64,000 bases of DNA from Podarcis muralis (taxonomy: Eukaryota): positions 2,170,001-2,234,000 of the forward strand of contig NC_135664.1 of NCBI RefSeq assembly GCF_964188315.1, given 5' to 3'. Positions within the stretch are counted from its first letter, which is position 1, and the number at the start of each line of letters is the position of its first letter. Under the pieces are notes generated by a model. It saw only the letters and a list, made by a program, of their open reading frames with translations, did not search any database and was not told the origin of the DNA. The translations under genes were made by a program, and so were the position numbers. Positions 15,462-48,549 of the stretch are shown here, piece after piece.

Positions 15462-17598
15462 TCATCTTGGTTCAGGGTGGACACAGCTGCGATGCTGCCG
15501 CATCCAGCGCCTGAGCCACGTGCAGAGTGGCCTCCTTTCCCCCTGCACCCCACTGCTGCCTCTTGTATTGGGTTGCTCTGGTGGCACTGGTGGTGCTGGC
15601 GGCAGCGCTCTTCTGAAGATCTTGCGAATCCGGGAGATGATGGAACCCAGGCAAGTGGGGGTCTTCGGAGGCCTCTCTTCCTCACAGTCCTGTGAGAAAA
15701 GTAAACAATTCACCTCCAGATTCTGGGAAAATGCCGCAATCATTAATCAATCAATCAAACAAACAAACAATTGATTGATTAAATCCGTACGCCGTCCTTC
15801 ATCTGAAGCTGTCAGGGCGGCTTACAGCATAAAAATACAAAATAAAAACACAACATATGTATTAAAAACAAAAACGAACTCATAAGCCAGCCTCCCAATC
15901 CACAAGCATGTTGAAAATGCCATGCGTTGGCCAATTAGCCCAAGGCTGGTTCTAGAGCAGAACTTTCCATGTTGGTGACACACTTTGGAGACATGCCTCA
16001 TTTCGCAACACAGGGATTCAGTTCAACTAGCCCTTTTCCAGCCCTGGGAGGAGCACACAGTTTGGAAAGCTCTGTTCTAGAGAAACGTCTTTGCTTGGCA
16101 CCTAAAGATACATAATGAAGATGCCAGATGAGCCTCCCTGGGAAGAGCATTCCGCAAGTGGGGAGCCACCACAGAAAAGGCCCCTTCTTGTGTTGCTGCC
16201 TCCAGACCGTTTGTGAAGGAGAAGGGCCTGTGTGGTGGCAGGCTGTCATAATCCCTCCTTTTCTTTTTGGGGGCAAGGCGTTATATGAAAGGGTTGTAGT
16301 CAGGAGGGAACACTCCTCTCCCAAGTTCTCATGTGGTCAGCCTTGGAGAGATCTCAACGAGACACAAAACCAAGAACAAGAGGGTGGGGGGAAGGTATAG
16401 GAGGCAGGAAAACCCCAGAGAGAACCGGCTTTGCAAAGTGCCAACATGGTTTTATTATCGCCAAACCCACTTTGCAATTAATAACTTCATTTGGCAGGAG
16501 CCACCTGGAAACGCATTCAAAAGAGATATCTTACAAAACAAACACCAAACCAAAAGCAACCCAGGAGAATTATCTCCACCCCCATCGTTCTGAGATCCAG
16601 TGCTGAGGGCCTTCTGGCGGTTCCCCACTGCGATAAGTGAAGTTACAGGGAACCAGGCAGAGGGCCTTCTCGGTAGTGGCACCCGCCCAGTGGAACGCCC
16701 TCCCGCCAGATGTCAAAGAAATAAACAACTATCTGACTTTTAGAAGACATGTGAAGACAGCCCTGTTCAGGGAAGCTTTTCATATGACATGAATGAATGT
16801 ATGTTTCGTCTGACCTCGATTACGCTTGCCTCCAGGTGTTCTCCAGGTGGGGTGCACGGCAAATAAAGGGCCTCCCCGTCCTCCTCTGGGGGGCTCTCTG
16901 GTACTTCCTGTGGCTCTTCCTCCTCGATAGCCACTTCAGAGGCTGCCTGCCAGCAGAGACAGGACCCCAGAGGTGGTGGCATTGGTGGTGGGGAGAGGGG
17001 AGAAAGAGAGGAGCCCAGAATGAGACAGGAACCCACATTGAGTCGCTAGCCAGGGAAGCCCTACAGCCCTGGCGCCATGGGGGGCTGGTCCATCAGGACA
17101 AGTGGGGCAGCAAGCCCATCTGCCCCCAGCAGCCCCCTGCCTGCGTGCCCCCTTGCTCACGACCAGTCCAGAAGGTGGCCTAACCGGCCAGCCGGCTTCC
17201 TCCTCCTCCTCCTCCTCCCCAGCCTCAGGGTTCTCCAGCTCAGCAGGGCTTCCCTCCTGCTCTGTCTGCTACGTACCTCATTGAGGGAGTCCCAAAGGGA
17301 ATCCAGGGAGGACAGGGAGGAAACACTAGAAAATGGTGACATACTTGGAACCTGCAAGGAAAAGATGCAAAAAACGAGCAATTAAAAAACGCAACCAAAC
17401 GTTAAAACTCAAGGCACCCATAACTGAAACAACAGTTCCATTCTGCGGTTGATATGCTTCCCTCCCCTTCTGCCAATCACCACTTAGGCCACGGCCACCT
17501 ACCCAGTCAGGGCTGAGGAGATCCAGCCGTTTTGCGGTCTCCTCCTCGCCTTTTCCTTCGTCCTCCTTGACATTGAGAATGTCCTCCTCGGTGGCTGA
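15462..17598 (-). CDS. Putative novel spliced gene, left-arm copy (exons 17503-17598, 17277-17351, 16815-16946, 15462-15689)
   Basis: Mirror image of 30579-32715. AG/GT boundaries, all junctions phase 0, reading frame open. Confidence 0.6.
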
Positions 17599-25253: not shown

Positions 25254-26965
25254 GCCGTACCTCGTTCCAGGTGTACAGAGAGATGTCGACCTGGATATGC
25301 CAAGGTGGTTCTAGAAGAAAAGCCCGTTTGCTGCTATGCTTGTGCTCGGTGTGCGGAAGGGACCTTCTCCGCCCAGGAAGGTGGGTGACTCCAAGGAGAA
25401 AGGTATTTCTGGAGAGAGTAAACACAGGGCAGTAATCCAGTCTCACCCACTTTTTGTGAGATTTCTGCAGACATTGGGGAATGTGGATTCTTCCTCGACA
25501 TCCATAGGATTAATCAACTTTATTACATCCAGGAAGGGAGTTGAAAGGAGTGGTCATAAGGAAGAAATCTCTGGGGTTGAAAGTGGGCAGCTGTGAGAGG
25601 AATGCCCATAAAGCATTCTTTCTTTATTTTTTATACCAAGTCACACCAAAAAGGAAATCATGTTGACATTTATAAAGAGTAATGGACAGGTGATGCAAAC
25701 CAGCAAATTTTTAATAGCAAAAGCACAATAAAAAATGAACAATACTTCATATGAAAATTATTACAATATAATCAATGGACTGTTTTGATCTCACTACTAG
25801 GAACATTGCATGGAAGCAACAGAAAACTGCATTTCAAATGTCAAGTTAAAGAGCTGTTTCTTCAGGATTAGGCAGGATCCAAAAAAATGCAGTTAACAGA
25901 AGCGGAGTGCTCATTGCTACTCAGTTTATCCTACATCACAATTTTGCTTTACCTATTTTAACATTCTTATTTCCTGAGGTCCACCGCAGAGTTTTTCAAA
26001 ACGTAAAAGAGCACAGATCATCAGGGATGTAAGTGATGTTGCAGCCACTCTTTTTCTCTTCCCCAGATGCAGAACATTGCACCAAATGCTCAGAAGATCA
26101 CCATTCAAACAAGGACAGAGATCAATGTGTCCCCAAGATTATTACCTTCCTGACTTATGAAGAATATTTGGGAATGGTTTTAGCTTCCGTTACCCTCTTC
26201 TTATCTATAACTGCAGGCACTGTGTTGGGAATCTTCATTAAATACAAGGAAACTCCCATAGTCAAAGCCAACAACCGGGACCTTTCCTACATCCTCCTCG
26301 TCTCCCTCCTGCTTTCCTTTTTGTCCTCCTTCCTCTTCATCGGGCGCCCAAGGAAAGAGACCTGCCTTCTCCGACAAACGGCCTTCAGCATCATCTTCTC
26401 AGTTGCTGTTTCTTCTGTCTTGGCAAAGACCATCACGGTGGTGCTGGCCTTCCTGGCCACAAAGCCCGGGAACAGGGTGAGGAGATGGCTGGGCAAGAGT
26501 CTGGCCAACTCCATTGTCATCTCCTGTTCTGGGGGGCAAGTTCTCATCTGCACCATCTGGCTGGGCTCTTCTCCCCCATTCCCAGAGCCCGACATGCGCT
26601 CCCAGGTGGAAGAGATCATCCTGCAATGCAACGAAGGGTCTGTGGCCATGTTTTACGTTGCCCTCGGCTACCTGGGCTTCTTGGCTGCCACCTGCTTCAC
26701 GGTGGCTTTCCTAGCCAGGAAGTTGCCCGGCTCCTTCAACGAAGCCAAGCTGATCACCTTCAGCATGCTGGTCTTCTGCAGTGTTTGGGTGTCTTTTGTG
26801 CCCACCTACCTGAGCACCAAGGGCAAGTACATGGTGGCCGTGCAGATCTTCTCTATGTTGGCCTCCAGTGCTGGGCTTCTGGGCTGCATCTTCCTTCCCA
26901 AGTGCTACATGATTGTGCTGAGGCCTGATCTGAACACAAAGGAGCACCTGACAACCAGAAATTAA
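25254..26965 (+). pseudogene. Vmn2r: V2R fragment, exons 5-6 (25254-25380, 26067-26965), reading frame open
   Basis: 127-nt exon TTAG|GCC...GAAG|GT and 899-nt 7TM exon. The gene begins mid-intron 4 at 23436. Confidence 0.92.
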
Positions 26966-27940
26966 GGGGACATATGATTCTTAAAATAGTCCATGTTCCC
27001 GATGCCCAGAAGTGCATAAAGGAAAGACACTTGCTCATCCATGTTGCTCATTCTTCATCTGTGAAAGAGATTGTGTTCATTCTTAGCCCAGGTTTTGTGT
27101 AGTCCTGTTGACATGAACCGTAAGATGGGAGGAAATGTTTTGCTACCTTGCTTTGCCAAGGACTACAATGAGTCCTGGTCTACTGCCCTTAGTTTGTAAA
27201 GTTTTATCATTTAATCATTTTTTGCTTTGAGAAGTTATATTTATCTCACAACAAGATAGGCTGGAGGGAGAGAGGAGTTAGGTCTTTGAGTGTGATTCCT
27301 TTGTCCTAACTACCTATTAACCATATCAATTCTGATATTCAACAATAGTTTCTAGTTATGTCATTTCTATTTATTGAATTTTCTCCATTTTCTACATGTA
27401 TGCTGTATCATTCATAAGTACACTTCACGTCATTTTGTTCTCCTAAGCTTTGTATATCAATAAACTGAGAAATTCATTTAAGACATCTTCCGTAGTCTGT
27501 TGGTTTAATTTCTGTATTGTGTAAGCTCTGCTCTCTGTTCCAAAAAGTAGCAACTGACCTTAGCCAAGCCTTGACTGGAGTCCAATGGGTTTTATTACAC
27601 TGGCCTGGATGTGACATGTTGTGCACTGATGTTGAGTGGATCACCAGATTACGAGTGAGCCAGCAAGAAGTTTAGCATTGGAGGAAAGCAATGAGACGAT
27701 GCCAGATAGTTGGATTCCCTGCCTGCCAAACCTTTTAAGAGGAGGCATCTTATGCTCAGTCAGGAAGGAAAAGCAAGAGGCCTCCTCCTCCAACTCAGGT
27801 TCCTCCCATTCAGGTCCCCATTTATAGAGCAAAACCAAGATCAGATGGGAAGTGAAAATAATTGACAGAACAGCCACTGATGAAGCATTTATATTAATTA
27901 GTCAAGATTGCATCGTACTTAAACTTTCATCACTTCAAAT

Positions 27941-29070
27941 AATTTTTATTAACTGGCCAATCACATCAAATTTAATCACATCACATAAATTCCGAATTAC
28001 AAAGCCAAATTTTGAATTTTGTTGGGGGGGACCCATATTTCAAGATCCGAAGGGGAATTCTGATCTTCTTCTTGCTGCTGCGTTAATGTCCAAATCAGTC
28101 CAAATCAGTCCAGACAGAGTTCATAATTCTATCCCATCTTATCTTGCTGTTTCCACATCACATCTTGTTCATATATTTTCTCTTTTTTCTTTATGATCTC
28201 TTCTGATAGTCTCCTTAAGCCAATAAACACCAATAGTAATAATAACCCTGTGTGAATTTTCCGTTCTTCCAATCCTCAAATCAAGATGGTTTCCATATAT
28301 CATCTCCTTCATAGATAACATCGCTCTTTCCATCATAATCTTGCAAAACTGTCGCTCTTAAGTCCCACTGAGGAGTTTAATCCACAATATATAAACAGCT
28401 TTGTTTCTCTCTTTCTCCTCCCAGACTCAAGACCTCCGACAGAGCTTCCCAATATGGCGATGGCATTTTTAACTGCGTCATTCCAAAGCTCTTATACATT
28501 CCACGCTCTTCTTAAAACATGCTTTGGTTCGAAAGTTTATCTCCACACAGCCTTAAATCCACAGCTTAAGTCCTTAAAACAACATTTCTGACTCATAAGG
28601 GGAGGGGATTCTTGTTTAATCACATAAGAAAAGAAAGGAAAGTTTTTTTTCCCTCCCCCATCAGTCATTTGCCGTACCGTGTCTTGGCGTATCTTCTCAT
28701 GATTATTCTTGTCTTGTTTTATCAGAGATCTCTTCTGTCAGCAGTCTTTACTCCCCCTTCTTCCTTGAGATATGTGCAATTCGCCTCATCCAAATTGTTT
28801 CTTTTGAAGTTCTTGCAGCTAGTGGCGCGAATCAGGGACGGCGTCCAGGAGTGCCAAAATCCCACAGGAGGGCTTTGTGCCTAGTGCCCCCATCCCCACA
28901 AATTCAGGGGTGGTATAAGGCACAGCAGGCAAGGGCCGCCCCACCACCATCCTGGGGGGGGGGGGGGTTAGGGAGGCTAATTACCCCCATCATAGCCTCC
29001 AAATTACCTCGTGTGGGTCGGAGAGATGTTATTGTCAGCCATCTTCCGATGCGCCCCCTAGTGGCCCCCC
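27941..29070 (-). mobile_element. Mirror copy of the 1.13-kb retroposon
   Basis: TSD AAACTTTCATCACTTCAAAT at 27921-27940 and 29071-29090. Confidence 0.88.
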
Positions 29071-30578
29071 AAACTTTCATCACTTCAAATTGGTGGAAAC
29101 TTTCATTGTTATTATGATTCAACTTGTAGCATTCCAATGAAGGGTGCTATATAAATTTAAGCTGGGAGGAGCCTCTGGCTTAACTCATTTTATTATTCTT
29201 ACTAATATTAATAAGTAATAAAATATGAATTTGGGGGAGGGGAATACATTACATTAGTGTCCAGTCATTGCATTTCTATAGGATTTTTCATTTCAATCAA
29301 TCAAATCTTTATTACAGTAGTAGACCAGCATCAGTAGAGTGGGGTACAATCATTTTCAGTCTGTAAAACGTTTTGGAAAGCAAAAAAAAGTATTTAACAC
29401 AAAGTATATATAAAAGTCTAAAAGAAGGGTTTAGGAGCATTAAACGGATGTGGAAGAGCATAAAAGGTTAGTATATAAAGACTATGGCCACCAATTTACA
29501 GAGCACTCTGATATGAGTGTTCATTAAATCTAGCATAATAATAGTAATGAAAAGGTGTTGCAATGGAGGAGTGCAGGGAAAAGAAAACTCCTTGCACTCA
29601 TTCTTTCTTGCTAAAGAATTAAAAGATTTCTCTGCTTTTCTCCTTCTTTTTCCCTTGGGTGGTGTGTTCAGCGGTCACCCTCAGGGGAAACAGGTCCCCC
29701 CCCCCTTGGAGGAAATGGACTGATCGGAACCTGGCTGTGACATCGGCTCAGAATCCCAGCCTCACTTTACAGTTGAGGCCAACAGCCTTTTGGTGGTTTC
29801 TCTGCAAGTGAATCAGAAAAAACTCTTATTGGACACCGAAAAAGCAAAGTCTGAAGACTGATGTCTGGAGAAATGGTGAGGGGACCAGCAGGAAACTGCT
29901 AAGGGAGTTTTGAGTCCTTTTATTCTGTTGCAGTTGCAGAGAAAGGAGGGTGGGGGGTGGGGGGGTGGGGTCCGCCCCAGGTGTCATCACTGAGGGGGGT
30001 GGGAAAAGGACATAAAGCCGAGTTTAAAATAAAAATAAAAATTGGGCTCACCAAACCTTTTAGTTGAGTCAAAAAACGCGGCTGGCACTGGGCGCCGCAT
30101 CGCGGGGGCTGGCACTTACCGGGGGGGGGTGTGTGTGCAGAGTGCCTGATCCACGCATCTCTCCTGGGGGTGACTTGGTGGCTTGGGCCCCTGCAGGCTG
30201 GGTGCTGCCTGAAACAGAAGCGTGGGGCTTGCGTCTGCCCCCTGCCTCTCCCTCAGCCGCCCTACAGCTGGGGGGGAGGCAGAGGATAGGCTCCAGAAAG
30301 CCCACAGGACCCCCGCGTTGAACCGGGCACCCAAGCAGCTGGCTATACCCCTGTTCTGTTGTTTGAATTATGGGTGCCTTGAGAGTGAATGTGCTGTGCT
30401 TGCTGCCCCACTCGTCCTGATGGACCAGCCCCCCATGGCGCCAGGGCTGTAGGGCTTCCCTGGCTAGCGACTCAATGTGGGCAAGAGAGTTTCCCTTCTG
30501 GGTTCCTCTCTCATTTTGGGATGCTCTCTTTCTCCTCTCTCCCCACCGTCAACTCTGGGGTCCTGTCTCTGCTAGCAG

Positions 30579-32715
30579 TCAGCCACCGAGGAGGACATTC
30601 TCAATGTCAAGGAGGACGAAGGAAAAGGCGAGGAGGAGACCGCAAAACGGCTGGATCTCCTCAGCCCTGACTGGGTAGGTGGCCGTGGCCTAAGTGGTGA
30701 TTGGCAGAAGGGGAGGGAAGCATATCAACCGCAGAATGGAACTGTTGTTTCAGTTATGGGTGCCTTGAGTTTTAACGTTTGGTTGCGTTTTTTAATTGCT
30801 CGTTTTTTGCATCTTTTCCTTGCAGGTTCCAAGTATGTCACCATTTTCTAGTGTTTCCTCCCTGTCCTCCCTGGATTCCCTTTGGGACTCCCTCAATGAG
30901 GTACGTAGCAGACAGAGCAGGAGGGAAGCCCTGCTGAGCTGGAGAACCCTGAGGCTGGGGAGGAGGAGGAGGAGGAGGAAGCCGGCTGGCCGGTTAGGCC
31001 ACCTTCTGGACTGGTCGTGAGCAAGGGGGCACGCAGGCAGGGGGCTGCTGGGGGCAGATGGGCTTGCTGCCCCACTTGTCCTGATGGACCAGCCCCCCAT
31101 GGCGCCAGGGCTGTAGGGCTTCCCTGGCTAGCGACTCAATGTGGGTTCCTGTCTCATTCTGGGCTCCTCTCTTTCTCCCCTCTCCCCACCACCAATGCCA
31201 CCACCTCTGGGGTCCTGTCTCTGCTGGCAGGCAGCCTCTGAAGTGGCTATCGAGGAGGAAGAGCCACAGGAAGTACCAGAGAGCCCCCCAGAGGAGGACG
31301 GGGAGGCCCTTTATTTGCCGTGCACCCCACCTGGAGAACACCTGGAGGCAAGCGTAATCGAGGTCAGACGAAACATACATTCATTCATGTCATATGAAAA
31401 GCTTCCCTGAACAGGGCTGTCTTCACATGTCTTCTAAAAGTCAGATAGTTGTTTATTTCTTTGACATCTGGCGGGAGGGCGTTCCACTGGGCGGGTGCCA
31501 CTACCGAGAAGGCCCTCTGCCTGGTTCCCTGTAACTTCACTTATCGCAGTGGGGAACCGCCAGAAGGCCCTCAGCACTGGATCTCAGAACGATGGGGGTG
31601 GAGATAATTCTCCTGGGTTGCTTTTGGTTTGGTGTTTGTTTTGTAAGATATCTCTTTTGAATGCGTTTCCAGGTGGCTCCTGCCAAATGAAGTTATTAAT
31701 TGCAAAGTGGGTTTGGCGATAATAAAACCATGTTGGCACTTTGCAAAGCCGGTTCTCTCTGGGGTTTTCCTGCCTCCTATACCTTCCCCCCACCCTCTTG
31801 TTCTTGGTTTTGTGTCTCGTTGAGATCTCTCCAAGGCTGACCACATGAGAACTTGGGAGAGGAGTGTTCCCTCCTGACTACAACCCTTTCATATAACGCC
31901 TTGCCCCCAAAAAGAAAAGGAGGGATTATGACAGCCTGCCACCACACAGGCCCTTCTCCTTCACAAACGGTCTGGAGGCAGCAACACAAGAAGGGGCCTT
32001 TTCTGTGGTGGCTCCCCACTTGCGGAATGCTCTTCCCAGGGAGGCTCATCTGGCATCTTCATTATGTATCTTTAGGTGCCAAGCAAAGACGTTTCTCTAG
32101 AACAGAGCTTTCCAAACTGTGTGCTCCTCCCAGGGCTGGAAAAGGGCTAGTTGAACTGAATCCCTGTGTTGCGAAATGAGGCATGTCTCCAAAGTGTGTC
32201 ACCAACATGGAAAGTTCTGCTCTAGAACCAGCCTTGGGCTAATTGGCCAACGCATGGCATTTTCAACATGCTTGTGGATTGGGAGGCTGGCTTATGAGTT
32301 CGTTTTTGTTTTTAATACATATGTTGTGTTTTTATTTTGTATTTTTATGCTGTAAGCCGCCCTGACAGCTTCAGATGAAGGACGGCGTACGGATTTAATC
32401 AATCAATTGTTTGTTTGTTTGATTGATTGATTAATGATTGCGGCATTTTCCCAGAATCTGGAGGTGAATTGTTTACTTTTCTCACAGGACTGTGAGGAAG
32501 AGAGGCCTCCGAAGACCCCCACTTGCCTGGGTTCCATCATCTCCCGGATTCGCAAGATCTTCAGAAGAGCGCTGCCGCCAGCACCACCAGTGCCACCAGA
32601 GCAACCCAATACAAGAGGCAGCAGTGGGGTGCAGGGGGAAAGGAGGCCACTCTGCACGTGGCTCAGGCGCTGGATGCGGCAGCATCGCAGCTGTGTCCAC
32701 CCTGAACCAAGATGA
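30579..32715 (+). CDS. Putative novel spliced gene (exons 30579-30674, 30826-30900, 31231-31362, 32488-32715); 141 aa from ATG 30835
   Basis: Exons of 96, 75, 132 and 228 nt, each preceded by a pyrimidine tract and AG; the first three end in GT and the last ends in the stop codon. All junctions phase 0. AATAAA at 32932. Confidence 0.62.
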
Positions 32716-35405
32716 GGAGGAGTTGGGAGGCTTGCACCGATCCGCCCAGGGGATTTTGCCACCCCCCCCTGGGATGACACTCGGGGCGATACCCCCCCCC
32801 CACACCCCACCTTCCTCCGCCAGTGGTGGCAGGGGAAGTAGCACCTGGAGGCGCCCGAGTCCCTAAGGGACATTTCCTTTCTGTTGTCCTTGCACAGGTC
32901 TTAATCCTTGTGGTCCAAACTGGAGAGGAGGAATAAAAGATCTGAGCGCGGAGGCAAGCGGGGCGAGAAACCCAACCCCATGTGGCCCTACGCTGGCGTC
33001 CCACACGGCCAGCCCCAGTCCTAGAGCCCGACACCTTTTGAGATTGCGGAGCAGAACGGAGAAGACAGCGGGCAAAGGGTGGACGGCGAAGGAGAAGTGC
33101 GAGAGAACGACAGCGTCTACGGTGGCGGAGGAGAAGGAGAAGGCAGGACTGAGAGGGGAACGATCCTGGAAGGTGGCTTGAAAAGAAAGGGCAATATGGC
33201 GTAGGAAAACTGCTAGCTCACGCTGCCCATGCCCAAAGGAGGAGGAGGAAAGAAAGGAGGAAAGCAAGCGAGCAAGAAGGGACAGCTAAAGAAAGAACTG
33301 AGAAAAGAGACAGTGAGACCTTCTGGGGGTCAAAGAAATTACAATAAGAAGGAAACTGAGAGTTTTTAGGTTGCGCTCCGCGGCAACCTGGAAGTAACAA
33401 AACGAAATTTAAAGTTTACCTTAAGAATTGTTGTAAAATTGATGAGTGCTAAAATGTCAAGGTTAAGAAAATATAGAATTACAGCTGTAAATTGATTAAG
33501 TAATGGAAGAAAGGGGGGGGGAGAAAATGAGTAATCAGTCAATTGAAGCGAGGGGTTGCTGAAGAAATTTTGAAATAGGGATGCAGAAGGGGGAGGTATG
33601 GGGAAGTCGGGGAAGTAAGGTTTATGAAAAAGAGGTTGTGAAATTATACGTGTTTATATGTTTGTGTGTTTATGTATTGTTTATTGTATTGTTTTTTATT
33701 TATGTTGGAAAATTAATAAAAATTTATATATATAAAAAAAGGAAGTAACAAAACGCATTATTTCCGGGTTTTGCCATTCGCGCAAACGCTCAAAATGATG
33801 TCACGCACATGCATGGAAGCAGCGAATCGCGACCAGCACACGTGCAGACGTGGGTTGCGTTCGCTTCAGGATGCAAAGGGGGCTCCGGAACGGATCCCGT
33901 TCGCATCCAGAGGTACCACTGTATACTAATGGGAGACTTAAATGGAGTTACATCGTTAGAGATGGGAGTTATTTGCCCAATCAAGTGGGGCATGGATTTT
34001 ATGAAACAGATCAAACAAACAAACAAACAAATATTGATAAAGAATAATAAAGCTGCTAGAATGCTAGCCTGGCTTGTGCACAGACAATTTGTTTATGAGT
34101 AGAGAAGTTTCTGCTCAAAGACGGGGAGCAAGTTGGTTCCATGTGCAACAGAAGCTCACCTTCCCCAAAACATGTCAAAGGGCAAAAGGTTTAAGGCTCA
34201 GAGCAACCTTTCTCCCCTCCACCAACCCCAGAGAGCTTCCCTCTGTTGGAGAAGCCTTTCAAAGATGGGGTGGAAATTCACTTGAAGTGGCTCCGAAGCC
34301 ACCAAGGTGCTACTTCCCTTCAGGGGGAGAACCAGAAGAGAGTGGCAGGAATCAAGCAGCCCAGACCCACCCATAGCGGCCAGAGGGTGGGCTTGAGAAA
34401 ACCCTCCCCATCGCAGGTTCCACCAGTCTCTGTTTCTAGAAGCCGCCAGGAAACAAAATCCCACCGCCATGTATCCCGTTCACAGTACTGAGGATGGCAT
34501 TTCTCTGCATTCTCCATTTTTTTTATTTTTTTAAATTTACTTATTGACTCTATATAAAGCCCTATGCCTGGAGGTCTCAGGGTGGTTCAGAGAGCAAAAT
34601 CAAAATATAAAACCACAATATATATAATCAAAATAAAAACAACAACCCAATAACAGCCTCTGCCCTCCCAAAAAACCCCACATTTTAAAAGGGCTTAGGA
34701 TGCCTGGGATACAAGGCTGGGACTCCCACATCTGGCTGTTGTCCATCCCTGACTCTCCCACCTCATATGAATCATAGAATGGGAGACTTGGAAAGGGACC
34801 CCAAGGTCCTCTAGTCCAACCCTCTGCAATGCAGGAATCTCAGCTAAAGAATCCCAACAGATGGCCATCCACCCTCTGCTTCAAAACCTCCAAGGAAGGA
34901 GAGTCCATGGTCGGATCCAGCTCCTTCTTTGGTCCTTGGGAGCAAAGTTCAGGCCAAACTTCCAACTTCCAAACACACCCCTGTCCATCATGTTTTTCTC
35001 CAGCTCTGCACCTGCCACTTGAGCCATTCAAGACTTCAGAAAGTTATTGTGGTGAAACTTATTCCACTTGGAATAATCAAAATTATAGTCATCTCATCTT
35101 CTGAAAGCTCAGGAGATATTTCTGTAGATTGCATGAGCCTCGGAAAGCAACATGACAATATTAATTGCGCTGTGTCTGGGAAAGAAAAAGTTGGTGCCGA
35201 GAATATTTCCTGTGTTGGAGACAGACTGAGTCAAGATGCAGAGCTGGCAAAAGAGGGGTGTGCCTGCCTTGTGCTTCCGAGCTCCAAAGGTATAGTTGAA
35301 AACCACCCAGATTGGGAAAGCCCACCCAGTCTGGTCTTGCAAGAGTCTTTGGGTTCTTCTGCTTCGCCTCCTTGGCAAGTAAGAGGAGGAGGAGGCAGAG
35401 CCAGA

Positions 35406-38591: not shown

Positions 38592-41077
38592 CTTCACCCT
38601 TTCTTAAGAGAAATCCAGTGCCTGAATACTTCCAGAGGCAGACTGTGCTTGGATGAGAACTGGGAGCTACCAGCGGACTTTGATATTGTGAACTGGGTGA
38701 TGTTTCCCAATATCTCTTATGACATTGTGAAAATTGGGAATATAAGGAGAGAGACGTCTGCTGGAATAAAGTTCACCATTAACCCAGAAGCCATTGAGTG
38801 GCCCAAGAAATTCAATAAGGTAGGGTAAATCACAAAGGGAGAAGGCTAGGAGATGATTATTATGTTTTTCCTTAAACAACCGCTGAAAAATGACCATATC
38901 AGGATATCAGGTTGACCAATGGTGTCTTGACCGTCAATAACAGCTGCAACCACCACTCTTTCTTTTCACAGCAGCTGAGATAGGAGGTAAATTTGGGGTG
39001 CTCAAAGAAAGGATAGAGCACAGAGGTCCTCAGAGAAGACACCAGAATCTTCGACAGAAAGGACTACGTAGATAAGAAGAAAAGGGAAAGCCCCTAGTAA
39101 AAGTGAACTATTGGGTTTTCATACATGCAGAAGGATGGAAAGTAATTTATTTTAGAAATGATAATTACTGATTTATTGTGGATATTTTAAATTTATGGAG
39201 TAAGCTCACTTGTAGATGTTGCAAATGTTAAACTATTGTATGTGCAGAAATTGAGAAGTGCACGGCTGTTGGTGAAGGATGAGAAGTTAAAAAAAAAACC
39301 CTATTGTAATATAAGGTTAATGTTAAGGAATGGCATATGAACTAGAAATAACTAGGACATTCATCAGCAATAAGAGGAAACCTTGCATGCCTCAAAAACA
39401 GAGTGAGGGAAACCAATATTTGGAAAAGTTATATTAAATTTGTCTTAATTAGTGATTGAGAGATTATCCGAATCCTGAACTTTGGGGAAATCACATTTTA
39501 GACTCTATTGCCATTTTCTTTGAAGATTTATTAAGCAGGGAAGCAGGTAAACGGAGAAGAGGAATCAGAGGCCTGTGGCGCAAACCTCAGTTGTCCTGAA
39601 CGAATTATGAAGAACAAGATATTCTGGTCACCCCAATGGTCAGTGGGGGGTTGAAAGGACCCTGATGAGGGGTCAAAGGCTGCAGCCCAAAGATCCGTTT
39701 GAATTCACTCTATGAGGGAGTAACATACAAACAAATACTCCTAACTGTTCCCCTTTCTTGCACCTTCTTGTCTTTCAGGTTAGGCCGTGCCTCGTTCCAG
39801 GTGTAATGAAAAATGTCGACCTGGATATGCCAAGGTGGTTCTAGAAGGAAAGCCCATTTGCTGCTATGCTTGTGCTCGGTGTGCGGAAGGGACCTTCTCC
39901 GCCCAGGAAGGTGGGTGACGCCAAGGGGGAAGGTATTTCTGGAGAGAGTAAACACAGGGCAGTAATCCAGTCTCGCCCACTTTTTGTGAGATTTCTGCAG
40001 ACATTGGGGAATGTGGCTCCTTCCTCAACGTCTTTACAATCACCTTCATTACATCCTGGAAGAGAGTTGAAAGGAATGACCATAAGGAAGAAATCTCTAG
40101 GATTTCTTCAAAATGTAATCGAGTTCAGATCATCAGGGATGTAAGTGATGTTGCAGCCACTCTTTTTCTCTTCCCCAGATGCAGAACATTGCACCAAATG
40201 CTCAGAAGATCACCATTCAAACAAGGACAGAGATCAATGTGTCCCCAAGATTACCACCTTCCTGGCTTATGAAGAAAATTTGGGAATGGTTTTAGCTTCC
40301 GTTGCCCTCTTCTTATCTATAACAGCAGGCACTGTGTTGGGAATCTTCATTAAATACAAGGAAACTCCCATAGTCAAAGCCAACAACCGGGACCTTTCCT
40401 ACATCCTCCTCGTCTCCCTCCTGCTTTCCTTTTTGTCCTCCTTCCTCTTCATCGGGCGCCCAAGGAAAGAGACCTGCCTTCTCCGACAAACGGCCTTCAG
40501 CATCATCTTCTCAGCTGCTGTTTCTTCTGTCTTGGCAAAGACCATCACGGTGGTGCTGGCCTTCCTGGCCACAAAGCCCGGGAACAGGGTGAGGAGATGG
40601 CTGGGCAAGAGTCTGGCCAACTCCATTGTCATCTCCTGTTCTGGGGGGCAAGTTCTCATCTGCACCATCTGGCTGGGCTCTTCTCCCCCATTCCCAGAGC
40701 CCGACATGCGCTCCCAGGTGGAAGAGATCATCCTGCAATGCAACGAAGGGTCTGTGGCCATGTTTTACGTTGCCCTCGGCTCCCTGGGCTTCTTGGCTGC
40801 CACCTGCTTCACGGTGGCTTTCCTAGCCAGGAAGTTGCCCGGCTCCTTCAACGAAGCCAAGCTGATCACCTTCAGCATGCTGGTCTTCTGCAGTGTTTGG
40901 GTCTCTTTTGTGCCCACCTCCCTGAGCACCAAGGGCAAGTACATGGTGGCCGTGCAGATCTTCTCTATGTTGGCCTCCAGTGCTGGGCTTCTGGGCTGCA
41001 TCTTCCTTCCCAAGTGCTACATGATTGTGCTGAGGCCTGATCTGAACACAAAGGAGCACCTGACAACCAGAAATTAA
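38592..41077 (+). CDS. Vmn2r: V2R exons 4-6 (38592-38819, 39784-39910, 40179-41077), frame open but 5' exons missing
   Basis: 228-nt exon LHPFLREIQ...[12 protein letters not shown]...WPKKFNK, 127-nt CRD exon, 899-nt 7TM exon. Splice phases 0/0/1 are consistent. Confidence 0.93.
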
Positions 41078-43554
41078 GGGGACAGTTGATTCTTAAAATA
41101 TTCCATGTTCCCGATGCCCAGAAGTGCATAAAGGAAAGACACTTGCTCATCCATGTTGCTCATTCTTCATCTGTGAAAGAGATTGTGTTCCTTCTTAGCC
41201 CAGGTTTTGTGTAGTCCTGTTGACATGAACCGTAAGATGGGAGGAAATGTTTTGCTACCTTGCTTTGCCAAGGACTACAATGAGTCCTGGTCTACTGCCC
41301 TTAGTTTGTAAAGTTTTATCATTTAATCATTTTTTGCTTTGAGAAGTTATATTTATCTCACAACCAGATAGGCTGGAGGGAGAGAGGAGTTAGGTCTTTG
41401 AGTGTGATTCCTTTGTCCTAACTACCTATTAACCATATCAATTCTGATATTCAACAATAGTTTCTAGTTATGTCATTTCTATTTATTGAATTTTCTCCAT
41501 TTTCTACATGTATGCTGTATCATTCATAAGTACACTTCATGTCATTTCGTTCTCCTAAGCTTTGTATATCAATAAACTGAGAAATTCATTTAAGACATCT
41601 TCCGTAGTCTGTTGGTTTAATTTCTGTATTGTGTAAGCTCTGCTCTCTGTTCCAAAAAGTAGCAACTGACCTTAGCCAAGCCTTGACTGGAGTCCAATGG
41701 GTTTTATTACACTGGCCTGGATGTGACATGTTGTGCACTGATGTTGAGTGGATCACCAGATTACGAGTGAGCCAGCAAGAAGTTTAGCATTGGAGGAAAG
41801 CAATGAGACGATGCCAGATAAGTTGTATTCCCTGCCTGCCAAACCTTTTAAGAGGAGGCATCTTATGCTCAGTCAGGAAGGAAAAGCAAGAGGCCTCCTC
41901 CTCCAACTCAGGTTCCTCCCATTCAGGTCCCCATTATAGAGCAAAGCCAAGATCAAAAGGGCAAGTAAAAATAATTTACTGACAAAGCATTTATATTAAT
42001 TAGTCAAGATTGCATCCTACTTAAACTTTCATCACTTCAAATTGGTGGAAACTCTCATTCTTATTACGATTCAACTTGTAGCATTCCAATGAAGGGTGCT
42101 ATATAAATTTAAGCTGGGAGCAGCCTCTGGCTTGACTTATTTCATTATTCTTACTAATATTAATAAGTAATAAAGTATGAATTTGGGGGGAGGGGAATAC
42201 ATTACATTAGTGTCCAGTCATTGCATTTCTATAGGATACTTCATTTCAATCAATCAATCAATCAATCAATCAAATCTTTATTACAGTAGTAGACCAGCAT
42301 CAGTAGAGTGGGGTACAATCATTTTCAGTCTGTAAAACATTTCGGAAAGCGAAAAAGTATTTAACACAAAGTATATATAAAAGTCTAAAAGACGCTAAAA
42401 GAAGGGTTTGGGAGCATTAAACAGATGTGGAAGAGCATAAAAGGTTAGTATATAAAGACTATGGCCACCAATTTACAGAGCACTCTGATATGAGTGTTCA
42501 TTAAATCTAGCATAATAATAGTAATGAAAAGGTGTTGCAATGGAGGAGTGCAGGGAAAAGAAAACTCCTTGCACTCATTCTTTCTTGCTAAAGAATTAAA
42601 AGATTTCTCTGCTTTTCTCCTTCTTTTTCCCTTGGGTGGTGTGTTCAGCGGTCACCCTCAGGGGAAACAGGTCCCCCCCCCCCTTGGAGGAAATGGACTG
42701 ATCGGAACCTGGCTGTGACATCGGCTCAGAATCCCAGCCTCACTTTACAGTTGAGGCCAACAGCCTTTGGGTGGTTTCTCTGCAAGTGAATCAGAAAAAA
42801 CTCTTATTGGACACCGAAAAAGCAAAGTCTGAAGACTGATGTCTGGAGAAATGGTGAGGGGACCAGCAGGAAACTGCTAAGGGAGTTTTGAGTCCTTTTA
42901 TTCTGTTGCAGTTGCAGAGAAAGGAGGGTGGGGGGTGGGGGGGTGGGGTCCGCCCCAGGTGTCATCACTGAGGGGGGTGGGAAAAGGACATAAAGCCGAG
43001 TTTAAAATAAAAATAAAAATTGGGCTCACCAAACCTTTTAGTTGAGTCAAAAAACGCGGCTGGCACTGGGCGCCGCATCGCGGGGGCTGGCACTTACCGG
43101 GGGGGGGTGTGTGCAGAGTGCCTGATCCACGCATCTCTCCTGGGGGTGACTTGGTGGCTTGGGCCCCTGCAGGCTGGGTGCTGCCTGAAACAGAAGCGTG
43201 GGGCTTGCGTCTGCCCCCTGCCTCTCCCTCAGCCGCCCTACAGCTGGGGGGGAGGCAGAGGATGGGCTCCAGAAAGCCCACAGGACCCCCGCGTTGAACC
43301 GGGCACCCAAGCAGCTGGCTATACCCCTGTTCTGTTGTTTGAATTATGGGTGCCTTGAGAGTGAATGTGCTGTGCTTGCTGCCCCACTCGTCCTGATGGA
43401 CCAGCCCCCCATGGCGCCAGGGCTGTAGGGCTTCCCTGGCTAGCGACTCAATGTGGGCAGGAGAGTTTGCCTTCTGGGTTCCTCTCTCATTTTGGGATGC
43501 TCTCTTTCTCCTCTCTCCCCACCGTCAACTCTGGGGTCCTGTCTCTGCTAGCAG

Positions 43555-45548
43555 TCAGCCATTGAGGAGGACATTCTCAATGACAAGGAGGACGAAGGAA
43601 AAGGCGAGGAGGAGACCGCAAAACGGCTGGATCTCCTCAGCCCTGACTGGGTAGGTGGCCGTGGCCTAAGTGGTGATTGGCAGAAGGGGAGGGGGGCATA
43701 TCAATCGTAGGATGAGACTGTTGTTTCAGTTATGGGTGCCTTGAGTTTTAACGTTTGGTTGCGTTTTTTAATTGCTCGTTTTTTGCATCTTTTCCTTGCA
43801 GGTTCCAAGTATGTCACCATTTTCTAGTGTTTCCTCCCTGTCCTCCCTGGATTCCCTTTGGGACTCCCTCAATGAGGTAAGTAGCAGACAGAGCAGGAGG
43901 GAAGCCCTGCTGAGCTGCACATGGGCAACCCTGAGGCTGGGGAGGAGGAGGAAGAGGAGGAAGAGGAGGATGCTGGCTGGCTGACCGGCCAGGCCACCTT
44001 CTGGACGGTTGAGAGCAAGGGGGCAAACAGGCAGGGGGCTGCTAAGGGCAGACCATGCTTGCTGCCCCACTCCTCCTGATGGACCAGCCCCCCATGGCGC
44101 CAGGGCTGTAGGGCTTCCCTGGCTAGCGACTCAATGTAGGCAAGAGAGTTTCCCTTCTGGGTTCCTCTCTCATTTTGGGATGCTCTCTTTCTCCTCTCTC
44201 CCCACCGTCAACTCTGGGGTCCTGTCTCTGCTAGCAGTCAGCCACCGAGGAGGACATTCTCAATGTCAAGGAGGACGAAGGAAAAGGCGAGGAGGAGACC
44301 GCAAAACGGCTGGATCTCCTCAGCCCTGACTGGGTAGGTGGCCGTGGCCTAAGTGGTGATTGGCAGAAGGGGAGGGAAGCATATCAACCGCAGAATGGAA
44401 CTGTTGTTTCAGTTATGGGTGCCTTGAGTTTTAACGTTTGGTTGCGTTTTTTAATTGCTCGTTTTTTGCATCTTTTCCTTGCAGGTTCCAAGTATGTCAC
44501 CATTTTCCAGTGTTTCCTCCCTGTCCTCCCTGGATTCCCTTTGGGACTCCCTCAATGAGGTACGTAGCAGACAGAGCAGGAGGGAAGCCCTGCTGAGCTG
44601 GAGAACCCTGAGGCTGGGGAGGAGGAGGAGGAGGAGGAAGCCGGCTGGCCGGTCAGGCCACCTTCTGGACTGGTCGTGAGCAAGGGGGCAGGCAGGCAGG
44701 CAGGCAGGGGGCTGCTAAGGGTATGCTTGCTGCCCTACTTGTCCTGATGGACCAGCCCCCCATGGCGCCAGGGCTGTAGGGCTTCCCTGGCTAGCGACTC
44801 AATGTGGGTTCCTGTCTCATTCTGGGCTGCTCTCTTTCTCCCCTCTCCCCACCACCAATGCCACCACCTCTGGGGTCCTGTCTCTGCTGGCAGGCAGCCT
44901 CTGAAGTGGCTATCGAGGAGGAAGAGCCACAGGAAGTACCAGAGAGCCCCCCAGAGGAGGACGGGGAGGCCCTTTATTTGCCGTGCACCCCACCTGGAGA
45001 ACACCTGGAGGCAAGCGTAATCGAGGTCAGACGAAACATACATTCATTCATGACATATGAAAAGCTTCCCTGAACAGGGCTGCCTTCAGATGTCTTCTAA
45101 AAGTCAGATATCGACTCAATGCGGGCAGGAGAGTTTGGCTTCTGGGTTCCTGCCTGTCTCATTTTGGGCTGCTCTCTTTCTCCCCTCTCCCCCCCCCCCC
45201 CACCACTGCCACCACTTCTGGGCTGGTTCCTCCATCCTGTCCAGGCCAACAGTCATCCTCTGAGGATGAAATATCCCATGACAAAGTGACAGAGGAGGAG
45301 GGAAGCCAGAGTGGCCAGAGAGACCCTTGTAGTGTCAGGCCGGGTTGCAGAGGGTTCTGGGATGTCTGTCCCCTCTTCCCAGCGCTGCTGACAGCCCTAT
45401 TCCTCCGCAGTTCCCCGAAATGGATATCGGTCCAGACAGCTCCCTGAGCTTAGACCACGAAGCCGAAGAGAGCGACACCTTCTGGGACTCTGTAGACCTC
45501 AAGGAGGGATGTGGCAGACAGAGGAGGCAACCTGTAAAGAGCTGTTAA
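43555..45548 (+). CDS. Third copy of the novel gene with extra exon modules (43555-43650, 43802-43876, 44238-44333, 44485-44559, 44894-45025, 45253-45333, 45411-)
   Basis: Each module keeps AG/GT, a length divisible by 3 and an open frame. The copy is cut off by an L1 fragment near 45550. Confidence 0.55.
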
Positions 45549-45549
45549 C

Positions 45550-46330
45550 AGAAGCAGAAGATCAGTTAAAGTTGAAAAAGTTTGAGTATATCAGAGATTT
45601 ACTAACAGATTGGTTACAGTATTATCAATTAAATGATGTTTTCAAACTTGATTAAGAAATATGTCTTAAAACGGAGATATCAAAATTCGAAAGAGATCTG
45701 TTGGGAAATACGGTAATGTGAAATTGCTATCTAAAATGTATAAATTGATTTTAGAATGGTATACTAACGATGAAGAAGTTATATCTGTAATGATACACTG
45801 GGCAAGAGATTTTGGTTATAGTTTTCACAATGGGAATAGTTATGGAAGAAATTTACAGCTTGCTGTACGTTGAAGGAAAGTTACATGAAAATGATGAATT
45901 GTTGGTACCCGGCAGCCAGTAAACTAGCAAAAATGTACAGAACAGGTTGAAACATGTGTTGGAAATGTAAGAAGAAGGAAGGTACATTTTATTACATGTG
46001 GTGGACATGTGGGGTGGTAAAAGAATTCTGGGAAATGATATATAATGAAATGGGGGGGGGAAATGTTTGAGATAACTTTTGTTAAAAAAACCAGAAGCTT
46101 TATTATTAGGGATGACAGGTGCTGAACTACCAAGAGATAAGAAAAGACTGTTTATGGATGTGGCGACAGCAGCATGGATGCTCCTAGCCCAGAGGTGGAA
46201 AGAAGACAAAGGACTGACCAGAGAAGAAGGGCAGACCAAATGGATGGAGTACGCGGAAATGGTAAAGCTGAAATGGTAAAGCAATCAGGAAGATCATATT
46301 TTTACAAGGGACTGGAATGATTTTTTAAAA
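45550..46330 (+). mobile_element. L1 ORF2 C-terminal fragment, decayed
   Basis: CWKCKKKEGTFYYMWWTC-like zinc knuckle, followed by KKPEALLLG...AAWMLLAQRWKE...MEYAEM. Confidence 0.85.
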
Positions 46331-46586
46331 ATATATATATATTTTTAATTATTTTTTTTAACATATCATTTTCAACGGTAATTAAACATACTTTTACATC
46401 TTATTCAAATTTTTGACTTCCATCAATCCTGTCTGAACTGGAATGATTTTGTAACCTTTTTGGGAGACCACAGTAAGCAGTTGAAAAAAGCAGCAGCTTT
46501 ATAACCAACACTTGCAAAGCAATGTGAACTTTGGAAATTGTGGATATATACTAGATAGATTACAATGAAAGATGCAGGAACGCTGC

Positions 46587-46628
<42 letters not shown>

Positions 46629-46768
46629 GTCTGTCAGAACCCAGGGAGGGAGGTCCGAAGGTTTGGGTAACCTTTTATCTTGTTTTTAATTGAATGGAAT
46701 AATTGTTATGTATATATATTGTGTAAAACCAAATATATACTGTTAAGAGTGCATAACATATACATATG

Positions 46769-46813
<45 letters not shown>
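46587..46813. repeat. (CTAT)n and (CA)n microsatellites
   Basis: Direct reading at ~46587-46628 and ~46771-46813. Confidence 0.95.
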
Positions 46814-46816
<3 letters not shown>

Positions 46817-46855
46817 TGGGAAGAAATCCCTCACCCCCCCAGCTTAGACTACAAA

Positions 46856-48549
46856 GCCTCTGAGGGCGTGCAGAGTGCAAATCCCCCCAGGGGCCCCTCT
46901 CTCTCCCGGGCTCACCTGGGGGCCCTGCCCCTGCCAGCCTCTCCGGCCTCTGAGGGCGTGCAGAGTGCAAATCCCCCCAGGGGCCCCTCTCTCTCCCGGG
47001 CTCACCTGGGGGCCCTGCCCCTGCCAGCCTCTCCGGCCTCTGAGGGCGTGCAGAGTGCAAATCCCCCCAGGGGCCCCTCTCTCTCCCTGGCTCACCTGGG
47101 GGTCCTGCCCCTGCCAGCCTCTCCGGCCTCTGAGGGCGTGCAGAGTGCAAATCCCCCCAGGGGCCCCTCTCTGTCCCGGGCTCACCTGGGGGCCTTCCCC
47201 CTGCCAGCCTGTGCGGCCTCTGAGGGCGTGCAGAGTGCGAATCCCCCCAGGGGCCCCTCTCTCTCCTGGGGGCCCTGCCCCTGCCAGCCTCTCCGGCCTC
47301 TGAGGGCGTGCAGAGTGCAGATCCCCCCAGGGGCCCCTCTCTCTCCTGGGGGCCCTGCCCCTGCCAGCCTGTGCGGCCTCTGAGGGCGTGCAGAGTGCAG
47401 ATCCCCCCAGGGGCCCCTCTCTCTCCTGGGGGCCCTGCCCCTTCCAGCCTCTCCGGCCTCTGAGGGCGTGCAGAGTGCAAATCCCCCCAGGGGCCCCTCT
47501 CTGTCCCGGGCTCACCTGGGGGTCCTGCCCCTGCCAGCCTCCCCGGCCTCTGAGGGCGTGCAGAGTGCAGATCCCCCCAGGGGCCCCTCTCTGTCCTGGG
47601 CTCACCTGGGGGCCCTGCCCCTGCCAGCCTCTCCGGCCTCTGAGGGCGTGCAGAGTGCAAATCCCCCCAGGGGCCCCTCTCTGTCCCGGGCTCACCTGGG
47701 GGCCCTGCCCCTGCCAGCCTCCCCGGCCTCTGAGGGCGTGCAGAGTGCAGATCCCCCCAGGGGCCCCTCTCTGTCCTGGGCTCACCTGGGGGCCCTGCCC
47801 CTTCCAGCCTCTCTGGCCTCTGAGGGCGTGCAGAGTGCAAATCCCCCCAGGGGCCCCTCTCTCTCCCTGGCTCACCTGGGGGTCCTGCCCCTGCCAGCCT
47901 CTCTGGCCTCTGAGGGCGTGCAGAGTGCAGATCCCCCCAGGGGCCCCTCTCTCTCCCTGGCTCACCTGGGGACCCATGCCCTGCCAGCCTCTCCGGCATC
48001 TGAGGGCGTGCAGAGTGCAGATCCCCCCAGGGGCCCCTCTCTCTCCCTGGCTCACCTGGGGACCCATGCCCTGCCAGCCTCTCCGGCCTCTGAGGGCGTG
48101 CAGAGTGCAGATCCCCCCAGGGGCCCCTCTCTCTCCCTGGCTCACCTGGGGACCCATGCCCTGCCAGCCTCTCTGGCCTCTGAGGGCGTGCAGAGTGCAG
48201 ATCCCCCCAGGGGCCCCTCTCTCTCCTGGGGGCCTTCCCCCTGCCAGCCTCTCCGGCCTCTGAGGGCGTGCAGAGTGCAGATCCCCCAGGGGCCCCTCTC
48301 TCTCCCGGGCTCACCTGGGGGCCCTGCCCCTGCCAGCCTCTCCGGCCTCTGAGGGCGTGCAGAGTGCAAATCCCCCCAGGGGCCCCTCTCTGTCCCGGGC
48401 TCACCTGGGGGTCCTGCCCCTGCCAGCCTCCCCGGCCTCTGAGGGCGTGCAGAGTGCAGATCCCCCCAGGGGCCCCTCTCTCTCCCAGGCTCACCTGGGG
48501 GCCTTCCCCCTGCCAGCCTGTGCGGCCTCTGAGGGCGTGCAGAGTGCAG
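46856..48549 (-). repeat. Inverted second array of the 80/90-bp minisatellite, ~20 units, mostly 90 bp
   Basis: Reverse complement of the units at 1-4178, including the terminal flank GTAGTCTAAGCT...TTCTTCCCATT. Confidence 0.97.

What the first reader, a model, noticed from the sequence alone, without database searches (positions are those of the whole stretch)
43555..45548. Exon-module copy-number variation between paralogs of the novel gene
Seen: the palindromic copies read S-A-B-C, while this copy reads S-A-S-A-B, then a diverged S-like exon (45253-45333, SSSEDEISHDKVTEEEG...) and an A-like exon (45411, FPEMDIGPDSSLSL...DTFWDSVDLKE). Each S/B-type exon is preceded by the same intronic block (GCGACTCAATG...TGGGGTCCTGTCTCTGCT). 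Substitutions keep the frame (ACC>ATT, GTC>GAC, TCT>TCC) and donors stay consensus (GTAAGT, GTACGT). Inference: a protein that grows by tandem duplication of symmetric phase-0 exon pairs, allowing variable length by copy number or exon skipping.
Basis: partly seen in the sequence, partly recalled or inferred. Interest (0 to 1): 0.75.

Follow-up and report, generated by a model that had tools for sequence, protein, structure and literature searches.

The report
Duplicated exon pair in lizard gene
One copy of a small, already annotated but unstudied wall-lizard gene carries a two-exon cassette twice where its neighbouring copies carry it once, an ordinary case of exon duplication by unequal recombination in a fast-evolving lizard-only gene family.

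Summary
Copy 3 (43.1-45.55 kb) has a tandem repeat of 683 and 668 bp, so it reads S-A-S-A-B where the palindromic copies read S-A-B-C. All exons are multiples of 3 and in phase 0.

The gene is not novel. RefSeq protein LOC144329085 (Podarcis muralis, 169 aa) is exactly Met-in-A(u1), Q+S(u2), A(u2), B and A'. The palindromic copies are LOC144329118 (A-B-C). This scan had already found that gene on the neighbouring palindromic DNA (s1-152554).

The repeat units begin in an intronic block that precedes every S-type exon, so unequal recombination there explains gain and loss of the pair. Unit 1 is about 4% from the palindromic unit and unit 2 about 1%. The second unit is therefore not a recent in-place gain: the palindromic copies lost a unit, or unit 2 was converted.

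Three paralogs on a 14-Mb chromosome also carry two units, and those arose separately.

RefSeq isoforms show no exon skipping. They differ only by alternative first exons and a ±Q tandem acceptor. S' is in no model. A' has lost its donor (GT>GG) and is the terminal exon.

Exon A is invariant across paralogs and species, while the S-type exons evolve faster than their introns. Function is unknown. RNA reads could not be obtained.

The parts
42839..42853 (+). ATGTCTGGAGAAATG followed by GT: a possible first coding exon (MSGEM). It is identical at 29861 (+) and 18316 (-). RefSeq isoforms X2/X3 of paralog LOC114588357 use it, but the annotated coding sequence of this copy does not.
   Evidence: pattern search; P0016 and P0034 start MSGEM+S
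43373..44055 (+). Tandem unit 1: intronic block, S_u1, intron, A_u1, intron. About 4% from the palindromic unit.
43555..43650 (+). Exon S_u1 (SAIEEDILNDKEDEGKGEEETAKRLDLLSPDW). Tandem acceptor TAG|CAG|, donor GTAGGT. It lies outside the RefSeq coding sequence.
43802..43876 (+). Exon A_u1 (VPSMSPFSSVSSLSSLDSLWDSLNE), donor GTAAGT. The RefSeq coding sequence of LOC144329085 starts at ATG 43811-43813.
44056..44738 (+). Tandem unit 2, about 1% from the palindromic unit. Its 5' edge is the duplication junction, where the intron downstream of A joins the S-type block.
44235..44333 (+). Exon S_u2 with the upstream acceptor (adds Q), equal to residues 23-55 of P0018.
44485..44559 (+). Exon A_u2, donor GTACGT, equal to residues 56-80 of P0018.
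44725..44893 (+). Intronic block before B. Its 5' 80 nt is 99% identical to the block before S, and its 3' part is 90% identical.
44894..45025 (+). Exon B (S-type, 44 aa), donor GTCAGA, equal to residues 81-124 of P0018.
45112..45333 (+). Diverged block plus S' (45253-45333, SSSEDEISHDKVTEEEGSQSGQRDPCS). It is homologous to S-type modules but absent from every annotated protein, so it is probably a decayed or skipped pseudo-exon.
45411..45548 (+). Exon A' (A-type). The donor is lost (GT>GG), so reading runs 13 codons into the former intron to TAA. It is the terminal coding exon, equal to residues 125-169 of P0018, and paralog LOC144326097 has the same tail.
45550..46830 (+). LINE-like 3' fragment directly after the stop codon. 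It has a zinc-knuckle-like CWKC...H...C frame, a (CTAT)n/(AC)n tail, and ATTAAA at 45628. The class is assigned by eye only.
30579..32715 (+). Right palindrome arm copy, S-A-B-C, equal to RefSeq LOC144329118 (the coding sequence is A from its Met, then B, then C). A D-type exon lies at 32918-33178.
15462..17598 (-). Left palindrome arm copy, the mirror image of the right one (100% identical arms).

Best explanation
The stretch is RefSeq gene LOC144329085 of the common wall lizard. It is a young paralog in a lacertid-only family of small, very acidic, serine-rich proteins that are predicted to be disordered.

Its S-A exon pair (99/96 + 75 nt, both phase 0) is present twice in tandem. Each repeat unit starts in an intronic block of about 180 nt that precedes every S-type exon (S, B and S'). 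Misaligned homologous recombination between two such blocks adds or removes one S-A pair without breaking the frame.

In this lineage the two-unit state is older than the split between copy 3 and the palindromic copies. Either the palindromic copies lost one unit, with a likely crossover between 43455 and 43460, or unit 2 was later overwritten by gene conversion.

The same gain happened separately in paralogs on another chromosome.

The annotated product reads A-S-A-B-A'. It therefore carries the conserved A motif (SLSSLDSLWDSLNE, the only predicted helix) twice, with a diverged third copy in A', separated by fast-evolving acidic spacers.

Shown: the anatomy, the frame, the match to RefSeq proteins, the unit counts in paralogs and the relative divergences.

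Inferred: the recombination mechanism, the order of events, and any functional effect of doubling the motif.
For: Anatomy and annotation.
- Tandem units of 683 and 668 bp, with the junction at the 5' edge of the shared block.
- The block is found only upstream of S-type exons: 7 scan hits against 0 expected, plus the diverged S' copy seen by alignment.
- P0018 (XP_077791719.1, 169 aa) equals the exact exon peptides of copy 3. P0001 (LOC144329118) equals A-B-C of the palindromic copies.

Order of events.
- Unit 1 differs from unit 2 plus the palindromic unit at about 24 substitutions and 3 indels.
- Unit 2 and the palindromic unit each have only 3-4 private changes.
- The upstream flank is 0.5% diverged.

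Recurrence in paralogs.
- LOC144326050, LOC114590114 and LOC144326096 read S-A-S-A-B-C.
- LOC144326097 reads S-A-B-A'. P. raffonei LOC128405524 reads S-A-B-C-D.
- The S units of copy 3 cluster with one-unit genes (ILN[VD]K), not with the two-unit genes (I[FS]HEK).

Conservation and structure.
- Between P. muralis and P. raffonei, A is 25/25 identical, S 22/32 and B 31/49.
- All indels between the copies are intronic.
- The AlphaFold model has mean pLDDT 55, and its only helices lie on the A motif.
Against: - No RNA evidence was obtained here. Use of S_u1, S' and the MSGEM exon in real transcripts is therefore unknown, and XP_ records are predicted models.
- The junction offers only about 17 nt of unambiguous shared sequence 5' of the one diagnostic site. 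A replication-based, microhomology-mediated duplication cannot be excluded.
- Within-window evidence for coding constraint is thin: 4 exonic changes, 2 of them non-synonymous. Exon against intron gives p=0.01 only if the repeat-rich intron after A is counted, and p=0.78 without it.
- DNA of the paralogs on the other chromosome could not be fetched. Independent origin and concerted evolution therefore cannot be told apart.
Confidence: 0.72

Rival explanations
1. Recent in-place gain. Copy 3 duplicated its own S-A pair after it split from the palindromic copies, as the reader implied with 'a protein that grows'.
For: Copy 3 is the only copy in the window with two units. The unit boundaries lie in the shared block.
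Against: The two units would then be equally distant from the palindromic unit. In fact unit 1 is about 4% away and unit 2 about 1%. Unit 1 also keeps the residues I and D that other paralogs share.
Confidence: 0.12
2. Non-functional young duplicate. Copy 3 is a decaying, truncated gene copy with no C exon, a lost donor and an adjacent LINE. Its open frame simply reflects its youth, and the RefSeq model is a prediction without biological meaning.
For: - There is no C exon downstream.
- The donor of A' is lost.
- S' is decayed.
- Only 4 exonic changes are available to test constraint.
- S_u1 lies outside the annotated coding sequence.
Against: The same S-A-B-A' tail, with the identical read-through ending ...GCGRQRRQPVKSC, is kept in a diverged paralog on another chromosome (LOC144326097, 87% identical). 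This argues that the A'-terminated form is an established isoform type. No frameshift or stop occurs in any of the five exons of the model.
Confidence: 0.2
3. The duplicated exons serve as alternative (mutually exclusive or skipped) exons. Copy number would then change the isoform repertoire and not the protein length.
For: Tandem exon duplicates are often alternatively spliced (general knowledge). S' is left out of the models.
Against: All 8 RefSeq isoforms of the two-unit paralog LOC114590114 keep both units. The copy 3 model also includes both A exons and S_u2.
Confidence: 0.08

Closest known systems
RefSeq LOC144326097 and LOC114588357/LOC144329118 (Podarcis muralis), paralogs derived from LOC114588499
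   Same: They have the same S, A and B exons, with A 25/25 identical. LOC144326097 has the same A' read-through terminal exon. LOC144329118 is the palindromic neighbour, 99% identical in DNA outside unit 1.
   Different: Those genes carry one S-A unit and copy 3 carries two. Copy 3 lacks the basic C exon (and the D exon) of the palindromic type.
Two-unit paralogs LOC144326050, LOC114590114 and LOC144326096 (14-Mb chromosome)
   Same: They have the same S-A-S-A-B architecture, read in frame, with the same ±Q tandem acceptors.
   Different: Their units form a separate sequence group (I[FS]HEK, and LESLW in unit 2). They end in exon C, not A'. The doubling is therefore independent or has been homogenised.
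Tandem exon duplication in animal genes in general, and the exon-doublet amplification of Olduvai/DUF1220 domains in primate NBPF genes (from my own knowledge, not tested here)
   Same: A two-exon, frame-neutral cassette is multiplied in tandem inside a gene that itself sits in segmental duplications, which gives paralogs different repeat counts.
   Different: The scale differs (1-2 units here against dozens). There is no sequence or Pfam relation. The protein here is predicted to be disordered.
Accelerated-evolution genes whose introns are more conserved than their exons, such as snake venom PLA2 and cone-snail toxins (from my own knowledge)
   Same: The intron block before S-type exons is 82-99% identical between modules, while the exons are 35-49% identical. 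S and B also change fast between species.
   Different: These proteins show no signal peptide and no toxin relation. Conversion or recombination among the blocks could produce the same pattern without positive selection.

Membership tests
Lacertid LOC114588499-derived acidic protein family (unnamed) | A-type exon with the SLSSLDS[LF]WDSLNE core | tested here: met
   A_u1 and A_u2 are identical to the A exon of P0016, P0017, P0020 and P0021. The core recurs in Zootoca P0022 and P. lilfordi P0023.
Lacertid LOC114588499-derived acidic protein family (unnamed) | S-type acidic exon ending ...LLSPDW, with a tandem TAG|CAG acceptor | tested here: met
   ±Q isoforms exist in the parent (P0004/P0008) and in the paralogs.
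Lacertid LOC114588499-derived acidic protein family (unnamed) | Basic C-terminal exon (…SIISRIRKIFRR…), shared with the parent gene | tested here: not met
   No C exon lies downstream of copy 3 in the window. Copy 3 ends in A', like LOC144326097. The palindromic copies do have it.
Tandem exon duplication by unequal homologous recombination | Head-to-tail repeat of exons plus introns, with the unit boundary inside sequence shared by the two recombining sites | tested here: met
   The 80-nt 5' part of the block is 99% identical before S and before B.
Tandem exon duplication by unequal homologous recombination | Reading frame preserved and both copies present in the mRNA | tested here: inconclusive
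   The frame is preserved, and the RefSeq model contains A-S-A. No RNA reads could be examined.
Alternatively spliced (mutually exclusive or skipped) duplicated exons | Isoforms that include one or the other duplicate | tested here: not met
   The 8 isoforms of LOC114590114 and the 2 of LOC144326050 all keep both units.
Olduvai/DUF1220 (NBPF) or any Pfam family | Match to a curated domain model | tested here: not met
   No Pfam match for any exon or for P0018, P0016, P0008 or P0003 above noise. No PDB relative.

The most novel reading that the evidence does not exclude
The S-A pair is a valency cassette. Each A exon supplies one conserved amphipathic acidic helix (a W-x-x-L type short linear motif). 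The intronic blocks, kept nearly identical, act as built-in recombination sites that let the lineage repeatedly change the number of motifs. The family is co-amplified with V2R pheromone-receptor genes for a related reason.
Probability: 0.1. Interest if true: 0.5.

Novelty: new member of a known kind. Interest (0 to 1): 0.3.

Why it matters
It gives a clean, small example of how a frame-neutral exon pair is gained and lost through homology in its introns. The example sits in a lineage-specific gene family that is still being copied between chromosomes and into a 100%-identical palindrome.

It also picks out exon A as the constrained, probably functional piece of an otherwise fast-evolving protein of unknown function.

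It does not open a new kind of mechanism, and the gene models are already in RefSeq.

Tried and rejected
- Word search with exon C alone found nothing, because of the length filter.
- Pfam on all exons and on family proteins gave nothing above noise.
- Rfam on 42.3-46.9 kb gave only sub-threshold microsatellite look-alikes of mir-297/466. The conserved intron block is therefore not a known RNA.
- PDB sequence search gave nothing.
- The protein atlas search on the parent gave best scores of 0.76-0.79 (INKA1/FAM212, AMER and others). These are below the level that counts as a lead, and Pfam does not support them.
- A literature search for the locus returned nothing relevant.
- The idea that the block is a dispersed transposon is not supported inside this window. 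The rest of the genome could not be searched.
Exons were searched one at a time by reference, and database proteins were used for full-length queries.

Full report
**Setting**

The window is vertebrate DNA. It contains BovB-type and LINE-like reverse-transcriptase fragments and several copies of a class-C (V2R-type) seven-helix receptor exon.

The scan's own index identifies it as common wall lizard. The protein matches below confirm Podarcis muralis.

A palindrome with 100%-identical arms spans about 6.8-23.2 kb and 25.0-41.3 kb. A third, direct copy of part of the arm lies at 42.0-45.1 kb.

**Check of the observation**

The repeat finder gives a 683-bp direct repeat, 43373-44055 and 44056-44738. 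Both units match the single unit at 30397 in the right arm at 98-99% (family D4; alignment).

Translation and tblastn fix the exons.

| Copy | Exon | Coordinates |
|---|---|---|
| Copy 3 | S_u1 | 43555-43650 |
| Copy 3 | A_u1 | 43802-43876 |
| Copy 3 | S_u2 | 44238-44333 |
| Copy 3 | A_u2 | 44485-44559 |
| Copy 3 | B | 44894-45025 |
| Copy 3 | S' | 45253-45333 |
| Copy 3 | A' | 45411-45548 |
| Right arm | S | 30579-30674 |
| Right arm | A | 30826-30900 |
| Right arm | B | 31231-31362 |
| Right arm | C | 32488-32715 |

The left arm mirrors the right arm on the minus strand. Every exon length is a multiple of 3.

The core of the intronic block occurs seven times in the window, always just upstream of an S or B exon, with none expected by chance. 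An eighth, diverged copy precedes S'.

- The acceptor of every S-type exon is a tandem TAG|CAG|.
- A' has lost the donor of A: GAG|GGATGT against GAG|GTAAGT. Reading therefore continues for 13 codons to a TAA at 45546.

**What it is**

Pfam finds nothing in any exon, and a word search with exon C alone was blank. I therefore ran the exhaustive search with exon C. It found four proteins.
- The best hit, P0001, is XP_077791798/9, 'uncharacterized protein LOC144329118 [Podarcis muralis]', 141 aa. It equals exon A from its internal Met, then B, then C.
- Two weaker full-length hits are LOC114588499 (356-357 aa, P. muralis, with counterparts in P. raffonei and P. lilfordi) and a Zootoca protein. 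Their N-termini hold an A-type then an S-type segment, and their C-termini hold a C-type segment. This is the parent gene.
- The fourth hit, P0002 (1236 aa, 16 matched stretches over query residues 25-52), was not examined further.

Searching with P0001 and then with P0018 recovered the rest of the family.

The key result is P0018, XP_077791719.1, 'uncharacterized protein LOC144329085', 169 aa, on the same 78-Mb chromosome. An exact substring check breaks it down as follows.

| P0018 residues | Window exon |
|---|---|
| 1-22 | A_u1 from ATG 43811 |
| 23-55 | Q+S_u2 (acceptor at 44235) |
| 56-80 | A_u2 |
| 81-124 | B |
| 125-169 | A' |

Copy 3 is therefore an annotated gene, and the extra pair is read in frame in its model. 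S_u1 lies outside the annotated coding sequence, and S' is in no database protein.

I never joined exons into a spliced query. Full-length queries were database proteins.

**Unit counts in the family**

A module scan on the sequences gives these architectures.

| Gene | Location | Architecture |
|---|---|---|
| LOC144329118 | this window (palindrome) | (S)-A-B-C |
| LOC144329085 | this window (copy 3) | (S)-A-S-A-B-A' |
| LOC144326097 | 14-Mb chromosome | S-A-B-A' |
| LOC144326050 | 14-Mb chromosome | S-A-S-A-B-C |
| LOC114590114 | 14-Mb chromosome | S-A-S-A-B-C |
| LOC144326096 | 14-Mb chromosome | S-A-S-A-B-C, two identical units |
| LOC114588357 | older annotation, place unknown | S-A-B-C-D |
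| P. raffonei LOC128405524 | 13.3-Mb chromosome | S-A-B-C-D |

A D-type exon is also present in the palindromic copies at 32918-33178.

A predicted Zootoca protein (P0022) has two A-like segments. By eye it reads as two diverged S-A-like units.

No protein with more than two units was found within the length range searched.

The eight isoforms of LOC114590114 and the two of LOC144326050 differ only in the first exon and in ±Q at the tandem acceptors. None skips a unit.

**How the pair is gained and lost**

Each unit runs from one block to the next, in the order block, S, intron, A, intron, block. The middle block of copy 3 joins the intron that normally leads to B onto an S-type block.

The 5' 80 nt of the block is 99% identical before S and before B, and the 3' part is 90% identical. 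Misaligned recombination between these blocks would duplicate or delete exactly one S-A pair.

Only about 17 nt lie 5' of the single diagnostic site. A microhomology-based replication error is therefore not excluded.

**Order of events**

In the three-way comparison, unit 1 differs from both unit 2 and the palindromic unit at about 24 substitutions and 3 indels. Unit 2 and the palindromic unit each have only 3-4 private changes. The upstream flank of copy 3 is 0.5% from the palindromic copy.

The first 87 nt of unit 1 match the palindromic unit, and from 43460 onward the palindromic unit matches unit 2.

The simplest reading is that the common ancestor already had two units and the palindromic lineage lost one by a crossover between 43455 and 43460. 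Conversion of unit 2 by the palindromic copies gives the same pattern. A recent in-place gain does not.

At the protein level, both S units of copy 3 group with the one-unit genes (ILN[VD]K). The two-unit genes on the 14-Mb chromosome form their own group (I[FS]HEK). The doubling therefore arose at least twice, or the units are being homogenised within genes.

**Exon against intron conservation**

For the young copies, counting each change once gives 4/303 in exons and 34/740 in introns (p=0.01), and all indels are intronic.

The difference comes from the GGA-rich intron after A. Without that intron it is 4/171 against 11/333 (p=0.78).

Two of the four exonic changes are non-synonymous.

For the old modules the pattern is reversed. 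The blocks are 82-99% identical, while the S, B and S' exons are 35-49% identical.

Between P. muralis and P. raffonei, identities differ sharply by exon.

| Exon | Identical residues |
|---|---|
| A | 25/25 |
| C | 43/47 |
| D | 74/87 |
| S | 22/32 |
| B | 31/49 |

So A is constrained and the S-type exons are the fast part. Either they evolve under positive or relaxed selection, or the blocks are kept alike by recombination and conversion.

**The protein**

P0018 has 42 acidic residues, 9 basic residues and 30 serines in 169 residues.

AlphaFold gives mean pLDDT 55 and pTM 0.13. Its only helices lie at residues 10-22 and 71-81, which are the LSSLDSLWDSLNE motif of each A exon.

There is no Pfam, PDB or Rfam match, and no atlas lead above noise.

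My working guess is that A is a short binding motif and that doubling the pair doubles its number. This is inference only.

**Limits**

XP_ records are predicted models. An earlier agent of this scan reported the palindromic gene as spliced and transcribed (s1-152554), but I could not test that.

**Verdict**

The gene is already annotated, and the mechanism is a known kind. Interest is modest.

Noticed in passing
window 4176-4228 (-) and 46834-46860 (+): Both GC-rich minisatellite arrays (1-4178 and 46856-48549, units of 80-90 nt) begin inside a fragment of an A-type exon of this same family (…[14 protein letters not shown]|SEGVQSA…). The fragment is 81% identical in DNA to the start of A' and resembles the Zootoca parent-type protein. 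The arrays therefore seem to have grown out of a family exon.
   Followed up: partly
window 4630-5000 (-): Remnants of a fourth, heavily deleted copy of the segment lie beside the left minisatellite. They comprise the start of the 29409-type flank and the intron and repeat that follow exon B in the palindromic copies.
   Followed up: no
window 31438/45110: Homology between the palindromic copies and copy 3 ends 85 nt after exon B. Copy 3 continues with the S'/A' modules, and the palindromic copies continue with an interspersed-repeat-like stretch, then exon C. The palindromic type may have lost S'/A' by deletion.
   Followed up: partly
window 32918-33178 (+) and 15258-14998 (-): A D-type exon, 98% identical to the tail of LOC114588357 isoforms, lies downstream of exon C in both palindrome arms. 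It is not in the 141-aa RefSeq product of these copies.
   Followed up: partly
window 25989-31447 and 40101-45110: The V2R seven-helix exon and the 5' part of the acidic gene are duplicated together as a direct repeat with a period of about 13-14 kb, nested in the palindrome. The two gene families are thus co-amplified.
   Followed up: no
window 43694-43716: Seven of the unit 1 against unit 2 differences fall within 23 nt of the S-A intron. This looks like one complex event or a micro-conversion and not like independent substitutions.
   Followed up: no
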